From Caecitellus pseudoparvulus (lineage: Eukaryota > Protista > Bigyra: Bicosoecida): a stretch of 64,000 nucleotides of DNA. The notes under the pieces were generated by a model. The model did no database searches. It saw only the letters and a list, made by a program, of their open reading frames with translations, and was not told where the DNA came from. This document shows positions 46,543 through 59,343 of this stretch, one piece after another. How positions within the stretch are numbered: the stretch's first letter is position 1; the number at the start of each line of letters is the position of its first letter. The position numbers and the translations under genes were made by a program. The stretch is from contig CBFFRQ010000077.1 in the NCBI GenBank assembly GCA_965644315.1, positions 1 to 64,000 on the forward strand. The letters run 5' to 3'.

Positions 46543-49500
46543 TTACTTGCCTAGCAGCCGGCCACACAGCCGAGCGAACCAAGCCTGAAACAGAAGAGCA
46601 GCTGGACCGAGAACCCCTGCATCCCTGCCTGTCCCCTTGATGCGGGAGTTCAAACTACTCAAGGAGAATGAGGCCTCTGACAAAGCCGCCACATCCCCAC
46701 CGCACACACCTGCAACATTGATCAACACGTCTGACAGCTCCTCCGCATCCCCGCTGACCCACGCGGCACGCAGCTGCTCTTCAAGAACATGGCGATCATC
46801 CTCGCTGTGCAGAGCCAAAGGCTTGAACTCCCTCAGCACATCCTCCAACACCGAGTCATCCGGCACACCTTGGTCTGCGGCTGGTGCCGCCACTGCAGGT
46901 GGTGGGGCGGCAGATGCCGCAATCGGGGACTCCCCGGTGAAGGCCGAACCCTGAGCCATGCCACTAGGCGCGGCCGTGCCATGCTGTGCAGGCTTGGCTC
47001 GACCCTTACTCCTAACCTGGCCCACCCACCCTTGGAAACGACCAACAGCTTTTCCAAAACCTCCCAACGCAGCACCTCGCTGTTGGTGGCGGTCTTTGAT
47101 GCTCTGCAAGCAACCTTGTGCACTCCGCAGTGCCGCCACATCCCCGCCACACACACCTGCAATGTCGATCAGCACGTCTGATAGCTCCCCCGCATCTCCA
47201 CTGGCCCATGCTGCACGCAGCCGCCTTTTACGAGCACGGCGATGTTGCTTGCTGTATCGAGCGAAAGGCTTGAAGTCCCTCAGCACATCCTCCAGCACCA
47301 CATGATCCCGAACAGCCTGGCCTGTGGCTGATGTTGCCACTGCAGGGGGAAGGGTGGTAGCTGCCTTCCGCCCAGACGGCTTTGTGCCCGGCGTAGCCTT
47401 GGTCTTGGCCTTTGCTGTGCCACTTGGCCCAGTCGTGCCACGTTGTGAAGGCTTGACATGCCCTTCGATCCCCACTCGATGCACCCACCCTTGAAACACC
47501 CGAAAAGCTTCAGCAAGAGCTCCCAACGCAACACCTCGCTGTTGGTGGCGGTCTTTGATGCTCTGCAAGCAACTCTGGGACTCCTGCAGTGCTGCAACAT
47601 CGCCACCGCACACACCTGCAATGTCGATCAGTACGCCAGATAGCTCCCCCGCATCCCCACTGGCCCAAGCGGCACGCAGCTGCTCTTCAAGGACACGTCG
47701 ATCTTCCTTGCTGTATCGAGCGAAAGGCTTGAAGTTCTTCAGCACCTCCTCCAGCACAGTATCGTCCTGCACAACCTGGCCTGTGACTGATGCCGCCACT
47801 GCAGGTGCTGTTGTGGCCGTTGACTTCTGGTCAGATGGCTTTGTGTCCTGCGAAGTGTTGGCCTTGGCCTTAGTCTTGGTTTTGGCCTTGGCCTTGGCCT
47901 TGGCCTTGGCTGGTGCTGCCGTGCCTTCGCCTTTGGGTAAAGTCACGCGTGACACGTCAGAAGTCTGGCTGTTGGGGGCTGACTTGTCAGAGCCTCTGCT
48001 GGTCCGGGATGGTCGCTTGTAAGTTGCTCTGTCTCGTTTGCTGTGAGCAAGCACAGCCACCGGCACCACACTTGGCGGTGCTGGCGAAGGTGCTGGAGGT
48101 TGAGCGGCTGGTTGTGGTTTCTTCAAGCTCGCAGTATGCATCCTCTCGAAGTCCATTCCCAGCTCCGATTCCAGCTCCTTCACAGCAAGTTTGGCTGCAT
48201 CCAAGGCCTCAAGAAACATGTCTGTCGGTGACGTATGGGAACTTCGCCGACGGATGAGCGCTGGCGGAGCGAAAGAGCAGGAGGACCGGGTACCTGCGGC
48301 CTGGAACCTTGCGCCAGATGCCCATTCAACTGGGACCAGCAACCCGTGCTTCGTCCAAAGGCTAAAGGCAGGAAAAGGAAGGGCGGCTGCGAGACGAAGG
48401 GTGGACGATTCAACCCCTCCCCCCATGGCAGTACCTGCGGCGGTTGAACTGCTGGCATCAAGTGCGGCAAACGCCGCATCCTGCAGAACACATGCCCCAA
48501 TGTTCGTTCCTGAGGACGGTTCACCACCGTCCATGCCGGAAGCGGTCTGCCGAGCGGCTGCCCCAGCGCGCCCCGCTGCACGAATGCACCGAATGATCAA
48601 TGACTGCAGCTCTGGGACGTGAGGAGAGGGCTGCAGCATGCACGACAAGGACTGGAGGAGCTTGAGGGCATTTATCGCGCGCAAGTTTGAAAGGGACCAG
48701 TTCAAATTAGTCCAGGAACGGTCTCCCTCCAGCTTTACGCTGCGAATGCGAAGACCAGAGCTTTCCTTGCCATCGGCATCAGCGGCACCGACGCGCCCCA
48801 TCCAAGAGCAGTCCACTGAGAACTGGCTGCAACGTGTCCCCAGCAAGCAGGCAGCCGCCACCATGCCATCATCAGGCCACAGAGCTGACACGTGGTCAAG
48901 TGAAAGGCTGTGCTCTGAAGCGCCTGCCTTGCAAAACGTGAACCACGCACGGTCTGGGCTGCTCGCACCCAGTGGCAGCAGCCGTGTTCTGCTGTGTGGA
49001 GAAGCCAGGCCAACATCGCCTGGCGGAACACACAAAACAGCACCCTCAGTGGACACTGCATGCGAAGTGCTTGCTGATGATCTGCCTTGGCGACGACCTC
49101 GCGCAGATGGACGGCCCCGCTTCAGCCCCGTAACGGCTGTACCGTCGTCACTATCAGCTTCAGCAGCTGCCCCGCCCCCCTCTTTCCCGATTGCGGATGG
49201 TCTCTGAAACAATGGTGTGTCTTCAGACCAGGTGGAGGCAAATTTTGAGAAAGCGTGCGCGTTTGTGTAAGGAGAGAAGGCTAGCTTTGAACACTGCAGC
49301 GAGGAGCTCAAGCACAGGTGCAAGTCTCGAAAGCTGTCAGCATCTTGCCAGTGGGCTGTAACCATGGTCGCCTCCCACCCCCCCCCCAAGGCATCACTGT
49401 CTTCATCTGCTGCCAAAGACAGAAAGCCGCGGAAGTACGTTCGTGTGTCCAGTCGCACCTGGTCTTCCACAGCGACAAGCTCTGGGTCAAAGGCGGGAGG

Positions 49501-52500
49501 CAGCACGCCAGCTCCGGCCTCACCAGAAACCGATGCCTGCTCTGCAGATTTTGCCTTCTTGACGCTTGGAGAAATGAGACAGCCCCAGTTTGGTGACTTG
49601 AAGTGCTTCTTGACAGTCCCAACCACATGGCACTTGGCTCGTCCCCGTGTGGCTCCGACTGGGCTGCTAAGTGCTGCCGCGCCGCCGCTGAAGAGCTGCT
49701 CGATTCTTTGGAGCACTTCGGCCCTCCCACCACTGTTGACAATGCGGAACGAAGAAGCTCTCATTTTTTGCAGCAAGGGAAGTCGCAAATTGCCCCCGAA
49801 ACGCGTTCGCAGCAAGCAAAGCATGGAAGGGTGGATGCCGCTGCGCAAGGGTGCAGCACTGGAAGCTCTGAGCACATCTACAAAACCTTCGTCATGTTGC
49901 ACTTCAGCATGCAGAGCTGATTGTGCGTCATACGCACCCGTAGCAGGGTCACGAAGGCACGATCTTGGCTTCCGTAGGTGAAAGTCAGCCCCAGCTGCGG
50001 TGCGAATGACTGACCTTGGCAGGCTTACACAGGTCCCGGCCGGTGTGCGGTATGCAACTGTTGTTCCTTGGTCATGAACACGCCGTCCAGCCGTGGGGAC
50101 TGCGTGGGGATCGGTGGGAAGCCCAGAATACTTGCAAGACGGCTTTCCTTGGGCCCACGGGTTGAACAGGAGCAATGCCGATGCTTTGCACGTCGTCGCC
50201 GTTGACTTCAGTGTGGCCAAGTCTGACTCTAGACCTTCCAGGTTCAAGTGGAGGCTTGATAGCTGATCGCGGAGATCTTCCTCGGCTTGTGGATCGGTGG
50301 TGATAGAGAGCTCCTCCTCAAGAGCCACTTGCTCCGCTACGAGCTGCTCCTTCATGCGGGCCAGCTTCGCCTTCGACCGCTGCTGTTCTGGCACCACAAG
50401 CAGCAAGCCGCACTGAATGGCTTCAGGAAGTGCGGCGACGAGGACTTCAGGCTGCGAGTGTGAGGTCATGTCCACAGTCACAGTCAACAAGAACTCGTCC
50501 AATCGTTGTGGGTCCGCTTGGAGCATGGCCCGCATGCTCTTCAGGCTCGCCAGATAGTCTTCAGCACTCACACCAGGTGGGGGCCACAGGCGATCCATGA
50601 CTTGGGCGCCCTCTTTCAGCCGTGACGCGTCACCGGTCACCAGATCGCACCATCGCTCTGGGAGCTGTGGTGCTCGTGCCTTGCGTCTTGCGCCCTTTGG
50701 GTAAACAAGCGCGGCACTCACCTCGCGAATCCGACGGTCGAGCTTTATGGCAATCCATGCAACGTTGCTGGACACGGCTTGTGAAGCTGCCTTGCGTTTT
50801 GGGAGCACGCATGCGAGGTTCTCGGAATGCGTCATAGCGATGAGGGAACGCAGGACATCCTCGTCTTGGCACAAGCACTCTTCGGGGACCTTTCTCTTAG
50901 AATCCCGAAGACAGCGGGCTGCAGCTTGCAACGCAGCATGCTGGTCGGCCACCCCTTCGTCATCCGGCAGGTGAAGCTGAAAGTAGCCACCGCCTCCTCG
51001 CCCTGACTGGACTCTTGCTTGCACCTCTGACAATTTCCGAAAATGGTCAAGGGCGCAGTTGTGAATGGCATGAAGAGCTTTTGCCTTGAGACTGTGCTTG
51101 ACGGCCCAAAAAATGCGTTTACCGGAAGGAGTGCTCCTCCAGTGCAAATACGCATTCCGGATGGCAAGAACATCTGACCCATTATCACTCCGAGTGGCAG
51201 ACATGCTTGCCGAGGCCGACGCCCGCATGCCAAGAACTTTTGCTACACTGCCAAAGGAGCTCTGTGGCTGCAAGAAGGGGCTGTCGTTCTCAATGATGGA
51301 GGCAAGGAGGCAGGCTTCAAAGGGGAGGTTCATGGCATATCCCAACCGCAGAAGCAAAGCCGTCTTTTCGTGTTGCGGGAAGCTTGCCATCCACATGCCT
51401 AGCTCTGTCAGCTTCGCATCCTCAGACGCAGACTGGAGTGCCCCAAGTCGCGCAAGGTGGCTCACCGCATCACGCAGCTGTTGCATGCTTGGTGGATCAA
51501 GAGCTTGCTTGAGCAGTTCGCTAACCCTCCCATCGAGCCCTGTTGTCTTGATTCGCAAGATGGTGTTGCGCAGAGGGAGGCGAAGCATTTCCGGGCTGTC
51601 GTGGGGCGGCATGCCAGAAGTGAAGAGAGCCTTGGGGTACAAGCGAAAGGCAACGCCTGGCATCTCGCGCCCCGCTCGACCGCTGCGTTGGGCTGCGGAG
51701 GCTTGCGAAACCCAAACTTGCACGAGCCCCGGCTGCCCATGCTTTGAATCAACTTGCATCTGCTTGGCCACCCCCAAATCAATGACGTGGGAGACCTTAG
51801 GGAGAGTCACAGATGACTCGACAACATTCGTTCCGATGACAACACGCGCCTTGGTGACCATGCCACCAGTTCGGTCAAAAGCCCGGAGCTGCTGGTCGAA
51901 CTCGATTGACGAGTGCATCGGCTGAACGACCAGGGTCTCTCTCTTGCGAACATCCACCAACCTTGGGTCGTCAAACAAATCTGTCAAGGAGTTCAGCGTG
52001 GCCATCCCATCAACAAAGATCAACACGGTGTGCCTGGGCCGTGCAACTGCGACTGCGAGCTCTACAGCCAGCCTCAGCTGAGTTTTCAACCCCTGACCCA
52101 AAAACCTCGGCATGGGAGCGGACCATGCCCTCTTGCCAGGCCTTTGAGCAAAGCACTTTGCGAATTTTTCAACAAGGGGTTGGACTCTTTGCCTCTGCCC
52201 AGGTGTCAGCAGAGGTAGACCCGCACCCCCGCTCTTCCACGTGCGCATCAGCTCATCCAGGAACACAGGGGTCACCTCATAGCGTTTGGCTCCGACGAAA
52301 ATGGCCTCAGGTGTGGGTTCACTTGGGATGCAGTCAAAGTACTCACTGAACAGCCCGGCCTGCAAGGTGGCAGACATGAGCACGAGGCGAGTTCGGCGCC
52401 GGTTTTGAGGAGCTCCATCTGCAGACAGTGAAGAAGGATGCTTGCCACCAGGCGCAACCCCAAAGTCATCATCATCTGCATCAAGGTAGGGTGTGTGTGG

Positions 52501-55500
52501 AGTGGATGGGCAGTGATCTTTGGTCAGCAGCTTCTTCAGCAGTAGACAAAGCAAGTCTGAGTCAGAGCTGCGCTCATGCACCTCGTCCAGGATGATGTGG
52601 GAGTACGAGGACAGCTTCTCCTTATTGTGGCTAAGCCACGTGAGCATCCAGGCAGTGGTCACGAAAGTAAGTTGGGTACCTTGCGACACGCATATTTCAC
52701 GTCCAATTCTGTACCCAACAGTCTTGCCGACAGCCTCCCCACGTTCTGATGCCACTCGCTTTGCGAGAGATGTCGCAGCGATACGAGTTGGCTGGCACAC
52801 TAACACCCTCGGCTTTCGCGCTGCCTGTGAATCATCTAGAACAAACTGTGGAACCTGTGTGCTCTTTCCACACCCAGTCTCTCCCTGGATGACTGTGATT
52901 GTCCGGTTGCGGATGTTGTCAATGATGCCTTCGCGGTGATCCAAGATGGGCAGCCGAGCAGAGCCATCACCCTCCTCTGGCAATGGGGTGCTTGCCTCCT
53001 CAATTTCTTCTTGAGTGGCCACTGGCAACTGTACTTCAAAGGGATTGAAGTACTCCAGACGCTGCTCCACCTCCACCGCCCCCGCCGGAAACGCACCCCC
53101 CTCTGCACGAGACGGCTCACCTCCCTCACCCCAATACCTCAACACATCCCCCAACACACCCTCACGCAGCGCGTCAAAGTACGCACGACCCGCCTCAGGC
53201 AGTGCCTCACGACCCGCCACCACCGCGGGATGCAGCCCACACCCCTCGCGCTGGCACGCCTCACGCTCCACCGCATCCAACAACCCGTACAACGTGCGGC
53301 CATCGTACACACCACCCAACCACACCATCGGCAACGCCCCGCCACCCCCCGCACCACCCGCCACCGCATCACCACCTGCTGCACCCACGCCTGCTCCTGC
53401 TACTGCCGCACCGCCCTCAACACCCGACATCGGCCACCGCACAGACTCGGGTGCCGGGCTCGCGCTGCCCCCCAGACCGCACATCACGCCGGCGTTCATG
53501 AACTCGTCCACCACGTTCTGGTAGCACTTCACCATCTCCACGTGCTCGTACCGAGGCACCTCAGCACGGTCCAACGCCAGACCGCTCGGACACCCAAACT
53601 CCAACGACACCAGCATCAACAACAGCACGTCCACCTGCACTGGCGTCAACAACACAGGCGCCGACATCGCCACGCCACTGCTGGCTCCCAATGTAACGTG
53701 TGCCTCTGTCTTGCGTGCCCACATGAGCTGCAGGCCCATGAGGTACCGCAGGGCCAGTGCGCCGACGATGGGTGTGGCAGACCGTGCATGGTCGGGGGGG
53801 GTGTCTTGCATGGCCTCCATGAACATGCGGTCAAGCAGCGGCAATTCGTCATCGTCTGGGGCCAGAAGCGTCTCAACCTTCCCTACCTGCATAGCTTTCT
53901 CAAGAATCGCATGGTGCTCTGCGTTTCTGACCTTAGAAACGCTGACGGGGCCGACAGGCCAGCTCCATGTTTCGCCTGCCGCTGAGTTGGCGGCAGAACT
54001 GGTTGTCACGCTCACGAGACGCAGCCAAGTCTTGAGGCGCTCCTCGCGAGACCCGTTGAAGTGTGCAAAGTTTGGAATGCTTGTTTCCTGCAGAGACGCT
54101 TGGATGGCAGCAGCGTCTTGGGGATCAACGCATCTGCACAGCTCGGGCTCTGGCGTCTCAAGATCGCCAACGACATTCACACCCCGGAACACAAAGTATG
54201 CCCGTGTGACACTATCGCCGGATTCAGTAGCGGCGGTGGCTGACCCCTCATCGTGTGGAGTTGGCTCGCTGACTCCTTCTCCTGCTGTGGGCACCGGAGG
54301 GGCAGCAGCCCCAGCCTCATGGGCCCACGTGTCAAATGGAGTGTGGCCATTCAGCATGATACACCCCGTGCAGAACGCCCTGCGACCCAGCGATCCGGTT
54401 GACGAGGCAATCAGGGGTGCTGTGACGAGCGAGGCCAACGGCAAGCTAGCTTCCCATGCAGCTGCTCGCCGAATGGCCTGCTTCCTCTCTGTACTATCGT
54501 CCAGATCTTGCAAATCATCTAGAGTGAACTCCAGATCCGAGAGGGATGGCGATGGAAAGTCTCTTGCAACCCATGACAACCCATCGGAGGAACCAGCCCA
54601 CGCTTTGCCTGAGGCGACCACTCGCGCCGTCTCATTAAGGTGAAGCTTGTACAGCCAGATGAGGGCTTGCCCAGACGTGTATGGCTTTTGAACGCCAGCA
54701 CACGTCGAGAGATCGACCAGGTTCTGAGCCAGTGCAAGGGCCACTTGCTCACAGCTCTCCCCATCCCCGGCAAGATCCTGGACACTGCATGCCTCAAGCA
54801 CTCTCTGAGACCTTTCCATCAATTCGCAAGTTTCAAAGCGGTCCACGGCAAGGGTGTGCGACACGCTGTCGATGAAGCGTTGCTCAACCTCCCCAACTGC
54901 GCCGGGAAACAGTAAGTCGCGGGTACTTTCCCAAGCTCCCCTTGGGTCACGATCACAGCCTGCAGTGGCGTCGATTTCCACTTTGTGAAGCAGAGCCTTC
55001 AGTGCCTTGGCAGCAGCGGGAACGTTGGGTAGGTCCTGGGACAGAGGTGGGAGCCCCAGACGTGTTCGAAGGTCGGCGTCTTCGACGAGCTGCTTCGTGT
55101 AGTCGTTCCCTGCAAATGCGCCGACCAGTCCAAGGAAGTCTTCATGCAGACTTAGCTCGCTGCCCAAGTCAGCAGCGGTCAGAGCTGGAAGCACAAGCTC
55201 ATCATCAGTCGGCCACCGGTGCGCCATGCCCGCGACCGCGCCCGGCTGGGCAGCCTCGCCGGGAACTTGAAGCTCATCTACAGCTGCCGCCACAAGAGTG
55301 CCAATCACCTCACTCAGCTGCAGTGGATGCCATGTGCATCCAGCCACCGTAGCGAAGTCAGTGTCACTACTGACTACCCCCTCACACACCCCTCGCACAA
55401 CCAGTGCGGAGAGAAGGTCATCGGCTTCGCCTGCGGCTTGAACGACATGCACTTGGGCCTGACAGCCCTCAAGTGGTGTGTGGCTGACTTTCTCCAAGAC

Positions 55501-55944
55501 TGCGATGCTGACTTCAAGGATGGGGCCGCCGATAACTTTGCAGCCTTGATACTCGACGTCCCTGTCAGCAGCAGTTCCTGCGCAGAAGTCCCTCAAAACC
55601 GCTTGCTTTTCCATGCGCTGCATGCTCCGGCGTGCATCCTCATCTGCTTTGAAGGCTGCCACCTTGATTGAGTCATGGGTCTTCCCATCCAGGACGAACA
55701 CCAGCTGCTCGGCATTCCCAAAACCGCGCGCGATAACTAGCTCCAGTACTTGCTCAAACGAACGCAGCTCTCCACCCCACGCTCCAGGAATGTCGCCATC
55801 GAAAACCTGTCTCATGTACAGTTCATTCACATGAAAAATCAACGAATACGCGTCGACGGCAAGCCGCCGGCCTGGGATTGGCTGCTGAGGCACTCGGCCA
55901 TCCAGCCGCTGATTGATGTACGACAGTAGATGCTTGACACCCAT
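46543..55944 (-). CDS. 3133-aa fusion: Asteroid/FAM120-type XPG-PIN nuclease + Spindle-E/TDRD9-like DExH helicase + 3 C-terminal repeats
   Basis: Nuclease motifs MGVKHL, AVDA, VLDG, GEAD, SSDTD and GNDY. Helicase motifs GETGCGKSTQ, GYRIG, DEVHER, MSAT, TNVVESSVT, QRSGRAGR and PEMLRLPL. One uninterrupted 9.4-kb ORF. Confidence 0.88.
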   Translation of the reverse strand: MGVKHLLSYINQRLDGRVPQQPIPGRRLAVDAYSLIFHVNELYMRQVFDGDIPGAWGGELRSFEQVLELVIARGFGNAEQLVFVLDGKTHDSIKVAAFKADEDARRSMQRMEKQAVLRDFCAGTAADRDVEYQGCKVIGGPILEVSIAVLEKVSHTPLEGCQAQVHVVQAAGEADDLLSALVVRGVCEGVVSSDTDFATVAGCTWHPLQLSEVIGTLVAAAVDELQVPGEAAQPGAVAGMAHRWPTDDELVLPALTAADLGSELSLHEDFLGLVGAFAGNDYTKQLVEDADLRTRLGLPPLSQDLPNVPAAAKALKALLHKVEIDATAGCDRDPRGAWESTRDLLFPGAVGEVEQRFIDSVSHTLAVDRFETCELMERSQRVLEACSVQDLAGDGESCEQVALALAQNLVDLSTCAGVQKPYTSGQALIWLYKLHLNETARVVASGKAWAGSSDGLSWVARDFPSPSLSDLEFTLDDLQDLDDSTERKQAIRRAAAWEASLPLASLVTAPLIASSTGSLGRRAFCTGCIMLNGHTPFDTWAHEAGAAAPPVPTAGEGVSEPTPHDEGSATAATESGDSVTRAYFVFRGVNVVGDLETPEPELCRCVDPQDAAAIQASLQETSIPNFAHFNGSREERLKTWLRLVSVTTSSAANSAAGETWSWPVGPVSVSKVRNAEHHAILEKAMQVGKVETLLAPDDDELPLLDRMFMEAMQDTPPDHARSATPIVGALALRYLMGLQLMWARKTEAHVTLGASSGVAMSAPVLLTPVQVDVLLLMLVSLEFGCPSGLALDRAEVPRYEHVEMVKCYQNVVDEFMNAGVMCGLGGSASPAPESVRWPMSGVEGGAAVAGAGVGAAGGDAVAGGAGGGGALPMVWLGGVYDGRTLYGLLDAVEREACQREGCGLHPAVVAGREALPEAGRAYFDALREGVLGDVLRYWGEGGEPSRAEGGAFPAGAVEVEQRLEYFNPFEVQLPVATQEEIEEASTPLPEEGDGSARLPILDHREGIIDNIRNRTITVIQGETGCGKSTQVPQFVLDDSQAARKPRVLVCQPTRIAATSLAKRVASERGEAVGKTVGYRIGREICVSQGTQLTFVTTAWMLTWLSHNKEKLSSYSHIILDEVHERSSDSDLLCLLLKKLLTKDHCPSTPHTPYLDADDDDFGVAPGGKHPSSLSADGAPQNRRRTRLVLMSATLQAGLFSEYFDCIPSEPTPEAIFVGAKRYEVTPVFLDELMRTWKSGGAGLPLLTPGQRQRVQPLVEKFAKCFAQRPGKRAWSAPMPRFLGQGLKTQLRLAVELAVAVARPRHTVLIFVDGMATLNSLTDLFDDPRLVDVRKRETLVVQPMHSSIEFDQQLRAFDRTGGMVTKARVVIGTNVVESSVTLPKVSHVIDLGVAKQMQVDSKHGQPGLVQVWVSQASAAQRSGRAGREMPGVAFRLYPKALFTSGMPPHDSPEMLRLPLRNTILRIKTTGLDGRVSELLKQALDPPSMQQLRDAVSHLARLGALQSASEDAKLTELGMWMASFPQHEKTALLLRLGYAMNLPFEACLLASIIENDSPFLQPQSSFGSVAKVLGMRASASASMSATRSDNGSDVLAIRNAYLHWRSTPSGKRIFWAVKHSLKAKALHAIHNCALDHFRKLSEVQARVQSGRGGGGYFQLHLPDDEGVADQHAALQAAARCLRDSKRKVPEECLCQDEDVLRSLIAMTHSENLACVLPKRKAASQAVSSNVAWIAIKLDRRIREVSAALVYPKGARRKARAPQLPERWCDLVTGDASRLKEGAQVMDRLWPPPGVSAEDYLASLKSMRAMLQADPQRLDEFLLTVTVDMTSHSQPEVLVAALPEAIQCGLLLVVPEQQRSKAKLARMKEQLVAEQVALEEELSITTDPQAEEDLRDQLSSLHLNLEGLESDLATLKSTATTCKASALLLFNPWAQGKPSCKYSGLPTDPHAVPTAGRRVHDQGTTVAYRTPAGTCVSLPRSVIRTAAGADFHLRKPRSCLRDPATGAYDAQSALHAEVQHDEGFVDVLRASSAAPLRSGIHPSMLCLLRTRFGGNLRLPLLQKMRASSFRIVNSGGRAEVLQRIEQLFSGGAAALSSPVGATRGRAKCHVVGTVKKHFKSPNWGCLISPSVKKAKSAEQASVSGEAGAGVLPPAFDPELVAVEDQVRLDTRTYFRGFLSLAADEDSDALGGGWEATMVTAHWQDADSFRDLHLCLSSSLQCSKLAFSPYTNAHAFSKFASTWSEDTPLFQRPSAIGKEGGGAAAEADSDDGTAVTGLKRGRPSARGRRQGRSSASTSHAVSTEGAVLCVPPGDVGLASPHSRTRLLPLGASSPDRAWFTFCKAGASEHSLSLDHVSALWPDDGMVAAACLLGTRCSQFSVDCSWMGRVGAADADGKESSGLRIRSVKLEGDRSWTNLNWSLSNLRAINALKLLQSLSCMLQPSPHVPELQSLIIRCIRAAGRAGAAARQTASGMDGGEPSSGTNIGACVLQDAAFAALDASSSTAAGTAMGGGVESSTLRLAAALPFPAFSLWTKHGLLVPVEWASGARFQAAGTRSSCSFAPPALIRRRSSHTSPTDMFLEALDAAKLAVKELESELGMDFERMHTASLKKPQPAAQPPAPSPAPPSVVPVAVLAHSKRDRATYKRPSRTSRGSDKSAPNSQTSDVSRVTLPKGEGTAAPAKAKAKAKAKTKTKAKANTSQDTKPSDQKSTATTAPAVAASVTGQVVQDDTVLEEVLKNFKPFARYSKEDRRVLEEQLRAAWASGDAGELSGVLIDIAGVCGGDVAALQESQSCLQSIKDRHQQRGVALGALAEAFRVFQGWVHRVGIEGHVKPSQRGTTGPSGTAKAKTKATPGTKPSGRKAATTLPPAVATSATGQAVRDHVVLEDVLRDFKPFARYSKQHRRARKRRLRAAWASGDAGELSDVLIDIAGVCGGDVAALRSAQGCLQSIKDRHQQRGAALGGFGKAVGRFQGWVGQVRSKGRAKPAQHGTAAPSGMAQGSAFTGESPIAASAAPPPAVAAPAADQGVPDDSVLEDVLREFKPLALHSEDDRHVLEEQLRAAWVSGDAEELSDVLINVAGVCGGDVAALSEASFSLSSLNSRIKGTGRDAGVLGPAALLFQAWFARLCGRLLGK
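46560..47800 (-). repeat. Three tandem ~450-bp (~150-aa) coding repeats at the C-terminus of the nuclease-helicase
   Basis: VLE(E/D)VLxxFKPxAxxS..LRAAWxSGDAxELSxVLIxxAGVCGGDVAAL..FQxW occurs three times, with spacings of 459 and 447 bp. Confidence 0.92.
53071..53837. repeat. Copy 1 of a ~765-bp near-identical direct repeat (copy 2 at 56539-57302)
   Basis: Alignment by eye shows scattered, mostly third-position substitutions and one codon indel. Confidence 0.95.
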
Positions 55945-56508
55945 GGCCACAAGAGCGTACAGAGATCTATCAAGGAGACGAACAAGAGACGTAACAATGT
56001 GAAGTCTGATGATGAAGTTTGGTGATTGGAAAGTGGTCACCCGGTTCTGCTGAACGCTTCTGGCACGCACTCGCGCAAGCGGTCAACACAGTACGCACCA
56101 CCACGCCAACGCCACCTCGATCAAGACCCTCGGTAAGATTCTGAAGCAGTCTTGTCCTACTAATCAATCACACTAAACTGAAATAAAAGCAATCGTCACA
56201 CCCGGGGGCTGTGACCAGTCACACGAAGCGCTGAAAGTGTCTGAAGCGAATGGCTGGTGTGCTATCAATTTCCGCAAGACTCAAAGACACACCTGTGGCC
56301 TGCACCAGCCACTGATGGCACACGCGAAATGAATTGAACGTGCAAACCACGTGCACACATATGGGGCCTCAAGCGTTCATACAATGAATTGCAAGTGTAC
56401 CCAACTTGAGCCGAGAAGTACAGTTCTACCACATATGCGTGGCAGCCAGCACATACACCAATGCAAGGGGACAGGACTCTCACAGACAAGGGAAACACGG
56501 AACAAGAG

Positions 56509-59343
56509 CTAGGTCCAGTACGCAAGCCCAGCCTCATACTCCACCACCCCCGCCGGGAACGCGCCACCCTCCGCGCGAGCAGGCTCACCTCCCTCACCCC
56601 AATACCTCAACACATCCCCCAGCACACCCTCACGCAGCGCGTCAAAGTACGCACGACCCGCCTCAGGCAGCGCCTCACGACCCGCCACCACCGCAGGATG
56701 CAGCCCACACCCCTCACGCTGGCACGCCTCACGCTCCACCGCATCCAACAGCCCGTACAACGTGCGGCCATCGTACACACCACCCAACCACACCATCGGC
56801 AACGCCCCGCCACCCCCCGCACCACCCGCCACCGCATCACCACCTGCCTCCACACCTGCTCCCGCTACTGCCGCACCGCCCTCAACACCCGACATCGGCC
56901 ACCGCACAGACTCGGGTGCCGGGCTCGCACTGCCCCCCAGACCGCACATCACGCCAGCGTTCATGAACTCGTCCACCACGTTCTGGTAGCACTTCACCAT
57001 CTCCACGTGCTCGTACCGAGGCACCTCAGCACGGTCCAACGCCAGCCCGCTCGGACACCCAAACTCCAACGACACCAACATCAACAACAGCACGTCCACC
57101 TGCACTGGCGTCAACAACACAGGCGCCGACATCGCCACGCCACTGCTGGCTCCCACTGTGACGTGCGCCTCTGTCTTGCGTGCCCACATGAGCTGCAGGC
57201 CCATGAGGTACCGCAGGGCCAGTGCGCCGACGATGGGCGTGGCGGACCGTGCATGGTCTGGAGGGGTGTCTTGCATGGCCTCCATGAACATGCGGTCAAG
57301 CACTGGCTCACCAGGACCGCCACACAGTGGAACTGCCCCGAGTTGGGCCGAACGTTTAGGGATCATTGATCCGAGGTAAGCTTTTGAAGGCTCCTTAGTT
57401 GTGACAGAGACAGGCTCGACGGGCCAGCTCCAAGCTTCACCTACTGGTTGGTGGGCCGCGGGAGAAGTCGTCACGCCCACAATGCGCAGCCAGTACAGGC
57501 AGCGCTGTTCCAGTGTGTCGAGCACCATACTTCGTGCAGGGAAGTCTGTGCTCTTCAGGCTTTCCGCGATTTCAACAGGTTTCTGGGGATTCACCCTGTC
57601 CATCAGGTGAACACCAGCTGCGTCTTGCGACTCAGGGAGCACGCTGAGACCAGGCACGACATAAAAAGTTCGTGCACTCTTGACTCTTTCCCGTGCACTT
57701 GAGTGCTGTCCGAAGGCATGATGGCTTCGACGAGCTCCTCGCCTCCTGTGCCTGTCGAAATGAGATGCCCCGTGTGGAGCTCCTTCCTGCAGCCACCCGC
57801 AGTCATCAGCAGAAAGGCGTCTGAAGAGCAAGTATCCAGAAACACCAAGAGTTCCAGCCATGGTAGCTTGAATAGGCAAGCTTGACAAGGTCGCGAGTGG
57901 GAGGCCCAGTTCCCAGGAGAGTGCTTTGCGGATCTTCGCCGCTCGTGGTGTGCTGTCACCCAAGCGCTCCACTTCTGCAGTAGTGGCATGAAGGGAAGCA
58001 AGGACACTGTCAGCCGGATCTACAAGTGTCGGAGGTGAGAACCCATCCCATACGGATACCCACAGCATCTTGTCCTCTAAAATGTTCTCAATGAAGCTCA
58101 GGTGCGAAGCAGTGGCCCACAGCTGGAGCTTGCCGAAGTTGTAGCCCCTGCTGATGCCCAGCGTGTTCGAGGCGCGAGCGAAGGCATGCCCCAACGTATC
58201 TGCTTGACCCTGCATCTCTTGTTCATCAGTTCCAAGCAGCGCCACTAAGTCGCTGCTTTCCACGGCTCGAATCAAGGCTGAGACTGCTGAATGGACCCGG
58301 AACGAGTGAGAGTCAAGCGTCCTTTGGACTCTGCGACGGAACTCTGGCAACCCTAAGCAGGAGTGCTCGCGTTCAAGGAGCGTGTGCAGCTGCTCCCACG
58401 TCGCTTGCAGTCCGCCTGGCGGGGCATCAAGTACCTCCAAGCCAAGCTGTCGGAGTAGGCTAGAGAGCACCTTGACATGTCCCGGCAGGCAGGGCACTTC
58501 TTCCGATGGGTAAAACCCTAGGGTCTTCCGTGCAGAACGGTCGTACAGCATGGATCTCGTGAAGTTGTTGCCCACGAAAGCTGAGACGAGGGGCATGTAC
58601 TCCGAGTGCACTCCAAGCCCGAGTGCCACCTCGTCGCTGGTGACCAAGGGTAGAAACGCAGGCCCGCCACCATCATCATCGCGAAGGAACTCTCCAAAGC
58701 TGACCGGATGCCACTGACTGTGTGGATATGCGGCAAGATCTGAGTTGTGGCTCACAGCACCGTCACAAACGCCGGAATGTACGAGAGCTGCGATGTGCGC
58801 GCTGGTGGAGTCGTTGGCGAACGTGACGTGGATGATGGCATCTGTGTGAACAGGGCGATCACGGGCCATGGCTATCAATGCTTGGTGCCCCACGTCCCCC
58901 AGCAGGCACTGGCTATCCTCAAGGAAAGAGTTCCGGTCTTGGGGGTCGAGCGGCAGTCTCTCAGAGGCGGGTTGGGGAGACTCCAAGTACTGCACGAATT
59001 TGTCTGCTTCCCGCACCCTGCCGACAAAACGGTGCAGAGAAGCTTGGTCTGCGACGTCAAATACAGTTGCTTGGAAGAAGTTGCTGCAGTGTAGCACAAA
59101 CACCAAGGTGTGTGCTTCGCCGAACCTTTGCACGACTACTTGCGTCAAGAACTCTGCGAAGCCGCACAGGTCCCCGCCTTGCACCACCCCAGCCGCCTCC
59201 CCTTCTGAGCGCCGGTAGAACTCATTCCTAGCGGCTGAGATGAGTGCTTCGCCATCGATGGCAAGGCGTCGGCCAGCGACAGGTACGGACTGCGACGGGT
59301 AGCCAGCAGCCGCGAGAGCACTGGTCAGCCCACGGATACCCAT
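56509..59343 (-). CDS. 944-aa Asteroid/PIN-like paralogue of the N-terminal part of the downstream gene, with a degenerate active site
   Basis: MGIRGL, AIDG, VLHC, SHNSD and GNNF align co-linearly with the motifs of the 3133-aa protein. Intact, intronless ORF. Confidence 0.85.
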   Translation of the reverse strand: MGIRGLTSALAAAGYPSQSVPVAGRRLAIDGEALISAARNEFYRRSEGEAAGVVQGGDLCGFAEFLTQVVVQRFGEAHTLVFVLHCSNFFQATVFDVADQASLHRFVGRVREADKFVQYLESPQPASERLPLDPQDRNSFLEDSQCLLGDVGHQALIAMARDRPVHTDAIIHVTFANDSTSAHIAALVHSGVCDGAVSHNSDLAAYPHSQWHPVSFGEFLRDDDGGGPAFLPLVTSDEVALGLGVHSEYMPLVSAFVGNNFTRSMLYDRSARKTLGFYPSEEVPCLPGHVKVLSSLLRQLGLEVLDAPPGGLQATWEQLHTLLEREHSCLGLPEFRRRVQRTLDSHSFRVHSAVSALIRAVESSDLVALLGTDEQEMQGQADTLGHAFARASNTLGISRGYNFGKLQLWATASHLSFIENILEDKMLWVSVWDGFSPPTLVDPADSVLASLHATTAEVERLGDSTPRAAKIRKALSWELGLPLATLSSLPIQATMAGTLGVSGYLLFRRLSADDCGWLQEGAPHGASHFDRHRRRGARRSHHAFGQHSSARERVKSARTFYVVPGLSVLPESQDAAGVHLMDRVNPQKPVEIAESLKSTDFPARSMVLDTLEQRCLYWLRIVGVTTSPAAHQPVGEAWSWPVEPVSVTTKEPSKAYLGSMIPKRSAQLGAVPLCGGPGEPVLDRMFMEAMQDTPPDHARSATPIVGALALRYLMGLQLMWARKTEAHVTVGASSGVAMSAPVLLTPVQVDVLLLMLVSLEFGCPSGLALDRAEVPRYEHVEMVKCYQNVVDEFMNAGVMCGLGGSASPAPESVRWPMSGVEGGAAVAGAGVEAGGDAVAGGAGGGGALPMVWLGGVYDGRTLYGLLDAVEREACQREGCGLHPAVVAGREALPEAGRAYFDALREGVLGDVLRYWGEGGEPARAEGGAFPAGVVEYEAGLAYWT
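56539..57302. repeat. Copy 2 of the ~765-bp direct repeat (copy 1 at 53071-53837)
   Basis: Same alignment as copy 1. Confidence 0.95.

What the first reader, a model, noticed from the sequence alone, without database searches (positions are those of the whole stretch)
50800..55944. Asteroid/FAM120-type nuclease fused to a Spindle-E/TDRD9-like RNA helicase
Seen: the helicase carries VGYRIG, DEVHERSSDSD, MHSSI..QQ, ESSVTLPKVSHVID and PEMLRLPLRNTILRIK. From memory these resemble the TDRD9/Spindle-E/plant DExH8 subgroup more than spliceosomal DEAH proteins (compare DHX8 in this window: GYAVRF, DEAH, PEIQRTNL). The region after the PIN core (HVEMVKCYQ..VYDGRTLYGL) resembles the Asteroid C-terminal part. 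Established: Spindle-E/TDRD9 act in piRNA transposon silencing. DDX60 also couples a PIN-like domain to a helicase, but of Ski2 type. I do not know a characterised protein with this architecture. Inference: a single-chain unwind-and-cleave effector for RNA or R-loops.
Basis: partly seen in the sequence, partly recalled or inferred. Interest (0 to 1): 0.82.

Follow-up and report, generated by a model that had tools for sequence, protein, structure and literature searches.

The report
Asteroid-like nuclease fused to Spindle-E-like helicase
One 9.4-kb gene of a marine stramenopile protist encodes a single protein that joins an apparently active FEN/Asteroid-type nuclease to a DExH helicase whose closest studied relative is Spindle-E. 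The same undescribed combination turns up in oomycetes, diatoms, dinoflagellates and sponges.

Summary

- **Nuclease:** residues 1-415 form a FEN/XPG-like PIN nuclease domain. All seven acidic active-site positions are present. The predicted fold matches FEN1, EXO1 and XPG among solved structures, and matches Asteroid and FAM120 models best among predicted ones.
- **Helicase:** residues about 995-1560 are a complete DExH/RHA helicase. In a careful tree it falls in a clade that is sister to a Tudor-bearing Spindle-E (support 100/99). That clade is separate from the DHX36, DHX29, DHX57 and DHX34 types and from the spliceosomal DEAH proteins.
- **Distribution:** the protein is not a one-off. At least 34 public proteins carry the same nuclease-then-helicase order. 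They come from oomycetes, diatoms, a labyrinthulid, a dinoflagellate and sponges, and all are unnamed or auto-named. I found no paper on them.

Not supported:
- The region after the PIN core showed no likeness to Asteroid.
- There is no Tudor domain, so the protein is not Spindle-E or TDRD9 itself.
- A single transcript was not shown by reads.

Function is inferred: helicase-fed cutting of RNA, or of RNA:DNA.

The scan had already noted this stretch in another window (s1-677818).

The parts
46543..55944 (-). Whole coding sequence of the nuclease-helicase (3133 aa plus stop), no stop codon inside
54700..55944 (-). FEN/XPG-like PIN nuclease domain of the Asteroid/FAM120 type (aa 1-415). Acidic residues D31, D86, E173, D175, D194, D196 and D281 are all present. 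Starts with the family's MGxxxL.
   Evidence: Pfam XPG_I 21.7 bits. Profile vs PDB: FEN1 4.6e-5. AF2 model pLDDT 70.7. Foldseek: FEN1 1e-6, then Rad2/XPG, EXO1, GEN1. Atlas shape search: Asteroid TM 0.61, FAM120A 0.56. Motif table.
53838..54699 (-). Lineage-specific linker (aa about 416-702). Relatives are seen only in the close paralogues and in P0122.
53049..53837 (-). Block (aa about 703-965) kept nearly identical to the tail of the neighbouring paralogue by gene conversion. No likeness to Asteroid was found.
   Evidence: contigs of other runs break at 53094-53099 and 53837
51265..52962 (-). DExH/RHA helicase core (aa about 995-1560): motif I GETGCGKST, motif II DEVHER, motif III SAT, motif V TNVVESS, motif VI QRSGRAGR. 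A lineage-specific insert of about 150 aa lies between RecA1 and RecA2. A weak winged-helix (HA2_N) match follows.
46546..51264 (-). C-terminal extension of about 1570 aa with no detectable relatives outside this genome. It ends in a 153-aa repeat, 2.6 copies (DNA 46685-47873).
56509..59343 (-). Neighbouring helicase-less paralogue (gene A, about 944 aa from its Met). It has lost five of the seven acidic positions. It is listed as context, not as part of the protein.

Best explanation
The gene encodes one polypeptide. An N-terminal Asteroid/FAM120-type FEN-like nuclease with a complete two-metal active site is joined, through a lineage-specific linker of about 580 aa, to a complete DExH/RHA helicase. 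It belongs to an old, conserved and so far undescribed eukaryotic family with this same domain order, seen here in stramenopiles, a dinoflagellate and sponges. The helicase of this family is the sister group of Spindle-E/TDRD9. That much is shown.

The mechanism is inferred. Like other DEAH/RHA enzymes, the helicase loads on a 3' single-stranded tail and moves 3' to 5' using ATP. It opens duplexes or strips proteins, and hands the displaced strand or the junction to the FEN-like site in the same chain, which cuts it. The most likely substrate is structured or duplex RNA, such as transposon, viral or aberrant transcripts, in a surveillance or silencing pathway. RNA:DNA hybrids are the second choice.
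For: - **One frame:** 3133 codons without a stop.
- **Nuclease fold:** the family profile hits FEN1 and EXO1, N-terminus to N-terminus. The AF2 model hits FEN1, Rad2/XPG, EXO1 and GEN1. The nearest predicted folds and language-model neighbours are Asteroid, ASTE1 and FAM120A.
- **Active site:** all seven acidic positions are kept here and in most relatives, and are lost in the neighbouring paralogue.
- **Helicase:** all motifs are present. HrpA/HrpB models score 1e-55 to 1e-59.
- **Helicase placement, tree:** the careful tree puts Spindle-E plus this clade together at 100/99. The clade without Spindle-E gets 99/93. DHX36-, DHX29-, DHX57-, DHX34-like and spliceosomal types lie outside.
- **Helicase placement, scores:** the clade profile scores Spindle-E at 494.8 bits against 461 for DHX29 and 457 for DHX36. 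This genome's own DHX36/DHX29-like paralogues score Spindle-E far below DHX36.
- **Same architecture elsewhere:** 17 proteins carry precomputed XPG_I + DEAD + Helicase_C. Coordinates confirm the domain order in four of them. A model built only from this lineage finds the PIN domain in front of the helicase in oomycete, diatom, labyrinthulid, dinoflagellate and sponge proteins, with E-values down to 4e-16.
- **Nearest large relative:** P0140 is a single 3196-aa frame on an independent 76.8-kb metagenome contig and has the full PIN domain.
- **Expression hint:** metatranscriptome contigs lie on both halves at similar low depth.
- **Silencing genes:** the genome has a Piwi-domain frame and an RdRP frame.
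Against: - No read or contig bridges the nuclease-helicase junction, because the repeated block breaks all short-read contigs there. The metatranscriptome runs are also flagged 'probably DNA'.
- In this protein XPG_I scores below Pfam's cut-off and XPG_I_2 does not score at all.
- The AF2 model rests on 7 sequences, and its arch region (aa 90-138) has low confidence.
- The Spindle-E link rests on one Spindle-E sequence with a long branch and an odd composition.
- HA2_C and the OB fold were not detected here.
- Nothing tested here shows nuclease or helicase activity, the substrate, or any tie to small RNAs.
- Human ASTE1, the best-studied Asteroid, cuts DNA (PMC9894118).
Confidence: 0.6

Rival explanations
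1. It is a DNA-directed enzyme for replication or repair. The helicase opens DNA structures (flaps, G-quadruplexes, R-loops, resected ends) and the FEN-like domain trims them, in the manner of Dna2, or of ASTE1 acting with a helicase.
For: FEN1, EXO1, XPG and GEN1, the nearest solved folds, are DNA nucleases. ASTE1 trims 3' DNA overhangs (PMC9894118). RHA-type helicases such as DHX9 and DHX36 also act on DNA (established knowledge).
Against: The helicase's nearest characterised relative is an RNA-pathway helicase. Asteroid relatives in moths degrade dsRNA (PMC7598268). FAM120A binds RNA (my own knowledge). No PCNA-box or repair-partner motif was looked for or seen.
Confidence: 0.25
2. The PIN-like domain is a nucleic-acid-binding or docking module without catalysis, as proposed for FAM120 and Mkt1. 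The protein would then be only a helicase with a substrate-recognition head.
For: The nearest predicted-fold neighbours include FAM120A. Inactive copies do arise in this very family: gene A here, and partly P0157 and P0158.
Against: All seven acidic residues are kept in this protein and in most relatives across very distant lineages. That pattern is what selection on catalysis predicts.
Confidence: 0.1
3. The fusion is an artefact. Two genes would have been joined by mis-assembly across the repeated 790-bp block, or by a lost stop in this assembly only.
For: The block is repeated 3.47 kb upstream, and all short-read contigs break at its edges. One contig path joins 53097 to 56567.
Against: With one unique segment between the two block copies, only one linear order is possible, and the copies differ at about 7% of bases. 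The frame continues in phase for 2170 codons. The same fusion exists in independent assemblies from many taxa. The joint has only 27 nt on its shorter side.
Confidence: 0.03

Closest known systems
Spindle-E / TDRD9 (piRNA-pathway DExH helicases of animals)
   Same: The DExH/RHA helicase core. Spindle-E is the best solved-structure match to the clade profile (494.8 bits) and the sister of the clade in the tree (100/99).
   Different: No Tudor domain. Carries an N-terminal nuclease that Spindle-E lacks. Lies beside the Spindle-E branch, not inside it. The organism is a protist, and piRNAs are known only from animals.
Asteroid / ASTE1, lepidopteran REase, and FAM120 (XPG_I_2 / Asteroid_N / FAM120A families)
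   Same: FEN-like PIN fold with the same acidic residues. These are the nearest predicted folds (TM 0.56-0.61 over 296-320 residues) and the nearest language-model neighbours (0.95). The diatom orthologue P0148 passes the XPG_I_2 cut-off.
   Different: Those proteins have no helicase. This protein itself does not reach the XPG_I_2 or XPG_I cut-offs. No likeness was found beyond the PIN domain.
Other single-chain nuclease-helicases: Dna2, Cas3 (HD nuclease plus SF2 helicase), WRN (exonuclease plus RecQ helicase), PhoH2 (PIN plus PhoH ATPase), Dicer
   Same: The working logic: a motor that feeds a strand to a nuclease in the same chain. PhoH2 is cited as a PIN-plus-helicase RNase in PMC5499597.
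   Different: Different nuclease and helicase families and a different domain order. None combines a FEN-like PIN with a DEAH/RHA motor. These comparisons come from established knowledge and were not tested here.
FEN1 / EXO1 / XPG / GEN1
   Same: Fold and active-site geometry.
   Different: Only 12-16% identity. Stand-alone DNA-repair enzymes. The Atlas shape search ranks XPG-type models (TM 0.48) below Asteroid-type ones.

Membership tests
FEN-like (XPG/Rad2) branch of the PIN-like nuclease superfamily | PIN-like fold with N-terminal MGxxGL and helical insertions | tested here: met
   AF2 model with pLDDT 70.7 and pTM 0.69. Foldseek against PDB puts FEN1 first at 1.2e-6 (the 50 rows shown reach 4.4e-4), followed by Rad2, EXO1, GEN1, XPG and T5 FEN. 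The profile aligns to FEN1 residues 1-187 starting from residue 1.
FEN-like (XPG/Rad2) branch of the PIN-like nuclease superfamily | Seven acidic metal-binding residues (FEN1 D34, D86, E158, E160, D179, D181, D233) | tested here: met
   D31, D86, E173, D175, D194, D196 and D281 are present. They are invariant or nearly so across 20 sequences.
FEN-like (XPG/Rad2) branch of the PIN-like nuclease superfamily | Pfam XPG_I above the gathering score | tested here: not met
   18.7-21.7 bits against a cut-off of 24.9 for this protein. The orthologues P0129, P0146, P0148 and P0162 pass, at 25.8-40.7 bits.
Asteroid / FAM120 (PF12813 XPG_I_2, PF27698, PF27242) | Match to the family models | tested here: inconclusive
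   No XPG_I_2 hit for this protein. One lineage member scores 8.7e-4. Diatom P0148 scores 29.1 bits against a cut-off of 24.2. The Atlas shape and feature searches both rank Asteroid/FAM120 clusters first.
   The Atlas feature search of aa 420-948 gave no usable hit. The lineage profile matches relatives only up to about aa 310. BLAST finds only P0121 and P0122.
DEAH/RHA (DExH) helicases | Helicase motifs I, Ia, II (DExH), III, V and VI; DEAD and Helicase_C domains | tested here: met
   GETGCGKST, QPTRIAA, DEVHER, SAT, TNVVESS and QRSGRAGR are present. Pfam finds both domains over their cut-offs. HrpB scores 2.7e-59. There are 70 PDB DEAH hits.
DEAH/RHA (DExH) helicases | C-terminal winged-helix, ratchet (HA2) and OB-fold modules | tested here: inconclusive
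   HA2_N scores 17.3 bits, below its cut-off of 21. HA2_C and OB_NTP_bind are not hit. The clade profile aligns to Spindle-E up to residue 694 and to DHX36 up to residue 738, which takes in the winged helix and part of the ratchet. Relatives P0127 and P0140 do hit HA2_C.
Spindle-E / TDRD9 | Groups inside the Spindle-E/TDRD9 clade in a helicase tree | tested here: inconclusive
   It is sister to the single Tudor-bearing Spindle-E available (P0174) at 100/99, and the clade excluding P0174 gets 99/93. Only one Spindle-E sequence could be used, and no TDRD9.
Spindle-E / TDRD9 | C-terminal Tudor domain | tested here: not met
   No Tudor (PF00567) match in the whole 3133-aa protein at E up to 0.1 or in its C-terminal 1418 aa at E up to 1.
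Spindle-E / TDRD9 | Acts in piRNA-guided transposon silencing | not testable with these tools
   This needs genetics and small-RNA sequencing. The genome does hold a Piwi-domain frame and an RdRP frame.

The most novel reading that the evidence does not exclude
The nuclease-helicase is the surviving form of an ancestral eukaryotic silencing or surveillance effector. In it a Spindle-E-type motor and an Asteroid-type nuclease work in one chain. On this reading, animal Spindle-E/TDRD9 would be a derivative that lost the nuclease and gained a Tudor domain. This would give the piRNA helicase a pre-animal origin and a testable ancestral activity.
Probability: 0.2. Interest if true: 0.8.

Novelty: new variant of a known kind. 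Interest (0 to 1): 0.6.

Why it matters
Spindle-E and TDRD9 are essential for transposon silencing in animal germ lines. What they do to RNA is still debated, and their origin is unknown. Here the sister family of that helicase, spread from sponges to diatoms and oomycetes, carries a nuclease with an intact active site in the same chain.

That gives a concrete biochemical hypothesis, unwinding coupled to cutting, that can be tested in culturable organisms such as diatoms. It also extends the Asteroid/FAM120 nucleases, themselves poorly understood, to a new partner.

The family sits in public databases under names such as 'hypothetical protein', 'HrpA-like helicase', 'DHX29' or 'spn-E'. A proper description would correct those labels.

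Tried and rejected
- **Single-sequence AF2 of aa 1-382:** useless (pLDDT 36).
- **Word search for full-length relatives through the nuclease region:** nothing.
- **Exhaustive HMMER search with the N-terminal 948 aa:** only three hits among 1.84 billion representatives, none with a helicase. On its own this would have suggested, wrongly, that the fusion is unique. The relatives came out only through the helicase.
- **Sequence search of the N-terminal part against PDB:** only chance GST hits.
- **AF2 with the 20-row alignment A2:** They were used only in local scripts and in an earlier Pfam scan.
- **Read laying:** could not bridge the junction.
- **Gene next to the relative P0140:** checked as a possible helicase-less paralogue. 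It is not one.
- **C-terminal 1570 aa:** no relatives in my set.
- **Four literature searches for the architecture:** nothing found.
- **Not done:** a tree with TDRD9, Ema1, DExH8, YTHDC2, DHX9 and DHX30.
not tested.
Full report
**What is in the sequence**

The minus strand of the window holds one open frame from 56070 to 46543 (3175 codons). The first Met is at 55944 and opens with MGVKHLLSYI, giving a protein of 3133 aa. At 60% G+C a random frame of this length would stay open with a probability near 1e-45 (my arithmetic). The finding's coordinates cover the first 1715 residues. The gene continues for another 1400.

**The organism**

The genome is 30.6 Mb in 215 contigs, and its long frames have no interruptions. 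Sequencing runs that hold this stretch are marine metagenomes and a coded 'organism A'. The nearest relatives of the helicase are from Nannochloropsis, diatoms and a labyrinthulid. An earlier follow-up in this scan calls it a marine stramenopile protist (s1-652535). I take that as likely but did not prove it.

**The nuclease**

- **Family models:** Pfam gives only a sub-threshold XPG_I match at aa 165-198 (18.7-21.7 bits against a cut-off of 24.9).
- **Direct searches:** a sequence search of PDB gives nothing real. An exhaustive HMMER search of 1.84 billion representatives gives three hits, all short or helicase-less.
- **Profile against PDB:** a profile of these sequences plus the genome's own paralogues (A1) matches FEN1 at 4.6e-5 and EXO1. 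The alignment runs from residue 1 to residue 1.
- **Active site:** it places D31, D86, E173, D175, D194, D196 and D281 on the seven acidic residues of FEN1.
- **Solved folds:** an AF2 model built on seven sequences reaches pLDDT 70.7 and pTM 0.69. Its best solved-structure matches are all FEN-like: FEN1 at 1e-6, then Rad2/XPG, EXO1, GEN1 and T5 FEN.
- **Predicted folds:** in the ESM Atlas the best matches are an Asteroid-domain protein (TM 0.61 over 320 residues), ASTE1 (0.57) and FAM120A (0.56), ahead of viral XPG-type proteins (0.48).
- **Language-model features:** the nearest neighbours are the same families, at 0.95.

The protein itself does not pass the family's Pfam model.

It found no support. 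The Atlas search of aa 420-948 gave nothing. The lineage profile matches distant relatives only up to about aa 310. The stretch lies in a block that is kept nearly identical to the tail of the neighbouring paralogue.

**The helicase**

Residues about 995-1560 carry every DExH motif, the DEAD and Helicase_C domains, and strong HrpA/HrpB matches.

- **Single sequence against PDB:** Spindle-E is first but tied with DHX29 and DHX36 (219.6, 218.2 and 215.4 bits).
- **Control with this genome's own paralogues:** its three DHX36/DHX29-like paralogues score DHX36 or DHX29 at 421-572 bits and Spindle-E at only 254-296. The near-tie for the fusion is therefore a real shift towards Spindle-E.
- **Profile of 18 clade members against PDB:** the gap widens to Spindle-E 494.8, DHX29 461.4 and DHX36 456.7 bits.
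- **Careful tree:** IQ-TREE with LG+C20+F+G4, 55 rows and 548 columns. It joins the one Tudor-bearing Spindle-E I could obtain (P0174) to a 34-row clade holding the query, with support 100/99. The clade without Spindle-E gets 99/93. DHX57, the DHX36/DHX29-like group, DHX34 and the spliceosomal paralogues lie outside.
- **Quick trees:** they give the same picture under two models.
- **Caveats:** one Spindle-E sequence only, with a long branch and an odd composition. No TDRD9, Ema1, YTHDC2, DHX9 or DHX30 could be included.
- **Missing modules:** there is no Tudor domain, and the OB fold was not detected.

**The architecture elsewhere**

Searching with the helicase part, restricted to long proteins, returned 66 hits. 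Of these, 17 have precomputed XPG_I + DEAD + Helicase_C. They include:

- oomycetes: Pythium, Phytophthora, Lagenidium, Peronosclerospora and Albugo;
- a diatom, Mayamaea, which also passes XPG_I_2.

Pfam coordinates show XPG_I at about aa 200-290 and the helicase behind it.

A model built only from this lineage's sequences, so independent of those proteins, finds the PIN domain at the N-terminus of 27 helicase-bearing proteins, with E-values down to 4e-16. With one oomycete sequence added it finds 34. Besides those above, they include:

- the diatom Epithemia;
- the labyrinthulid Hondaea, labelled 'DHX29';
- the dinoflagellate Effrenium;
- two proteins whose EukProt labels I read, from memory, as the sponges Sycon and Ephydatia.

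The acidic residues are kept in most of them. PIN-bearing members lie in every major sub-clade of the helicase clade. The fusion therefore probably predates the clade, with later losses or truncated gene models.

The nearest large relative, P0140, is a single 3196-aa frame on an independent 76.8-kb metagenome contig of an intron-poor eukaryote. It has the complete PIN domain.

The fusion is therefore neither an assembly artefact nor private to this genome. Four full-text searches found no paper describing it. The 2017 classification of PIN-like domains lists Asteroid as 'function unknown' and, in the passages my term search returned, names no DEAH fusion.

**Transcript evidence**

I could not show one mRNA. 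Contigs from a seawater metatranscriptome lie on both the helicase (51198-52944) and the nuclease (54440-56008) at similar low depth and 92-95% identity. The run is flagged 'probably DNA'. Every contig of every run stops at the edges of the repeated block, at 53094-53099 and 53837.

One DNA contig path joins 53097 to 56567 with only 27 nt on one side. That is a walk through the repeat, not an isoform. Because only one unique segment lies between the two block copies, and the copies differ at about 7% of bases, the assembled order is the only linear one.

**Local family in this genome**

- **Gene A:** it lies just upstream on the same strand (56509-59343). It is a helicase-less paralogue, 44% identical overall and nearly identical over the last 260 aa or so. 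It has lost five of the seven acidic positions.
- **Third copy:** on contig 78, helicase-less with an intact site, 73% identical. Its environmental counterpart P0121 stands alone on a metagenome scaffold.
- **Contig 110:** holds a second copy of the C-terminal 1500 aa, cut by the contig end.

**How it most likely works**

Shown:

- one chain;
- a FEN-like site with all its catalytic residues;
- a complete DExH motor;
- conservation of the pair across very distant eukaryotes.

Inferred from what is established for DEAH/RHA helicases (3' to 5' translocation on single strands) and for FEN-like nucleases (two-metal cleavage of strands at junctions): the motor opens a duplex or clears proteins and delivers the strand to the nuclease.

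I favour RNA as the substrate, at roughly 55%, for three reasons:

- the kinship to Spindle-E;
- the dsRNA-degrading Asteroid relatives in moths (PMC7598268);
- the presence of Piwi-domain and RdRP frames in this genome.

DNA or RNA:DNA hybrids remain a serious rival, at about 30%, because ASTE1 and all the solved FEN-like relatives cut DNA (PMC9894118).

**Verdict**

The thing is real and undescribed. It is a member of a widespread family and not a singular invention, and its function is still a hypothesis. This stretch was also noted by the scan in another window (s1-677818, s1-677953). My tests agree with those notes.

Noticed in passing
window 56509-59343 (-): Helicase-less paralogue directly upstream on the same strand. 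Five of the seven acidic active-site positions are replaced (D86, E173, D175, D194, D281), so it is probably a dead nuclease. Its last 260 aa or so are nearly identical to gene B.
   Followed up: partly
window 53049-53837 and 56517-57300: A block of about 790 bp shared by the two otherwise 44%-identical paralogues, consistent with gene conversion. It breaks every short-read contig laid on the region. The environmental protein P0121 resembles the contig-78 copy at the front and the window's block at the back, so conversion seems to act among all the paralogues.
   Followed up: partly
G000:C78:418281-421109 (L002): Third paralogue, 73% identical to the N-terminal 948 aa. It is helicase-less, keeps an intact active site, and ends with the same tail as gene A.
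   Followed up: partly
G000:C110:6832-11451 (L006, L007): A second copy of the C-terminal 1500 aa or so of the fusion protein (75-84% identical). Its open frame runs off the contig end inside the helicase. The front of this copy is not in the assembly.
   Followed up: no
window 46685-47873: Tandem repeat with a 459-nt period, 2.6 copies, 76% matches. It encodes a 153-aa repeat at the protein's C-terminus. There is a weak Pfam match to the dinoflagellate Luciferase/LBP N-terminal domain (23.8 bits, cut-off 25).
   Followed up: partly
G000:C41:129337-129717 and G000:C73:60724-62292: The genome holds a Piwi-domain frame (34 bits, 918-aa open frame) and an RNA-dependent RNA polymerase frame (154 bits, 1198-aa open frame). 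An RNA-silencing toolkit is therefore probably present.
   Followed up: no
P0125 and P0163 (Calypogeia fissa, a liverwort): These proteins have the same helicase type, and their nearest rows in a quick tree are members of this clade. They carry a 3'-5' exonuclease domain (PF01612) instead of the PIN domain. Nuclease-helicase coupling may have arisen more than once in this helicase clade.
   Followed up: partly
window 52000-52450 (aa about 1145-1295): An insert of about 150 aa, low in complexity and partly acidic, lies between the two RecA-like halves of the helicase. It is absent from Spindle-E and DHX36 in the PDB alignments.
   Followed up: no
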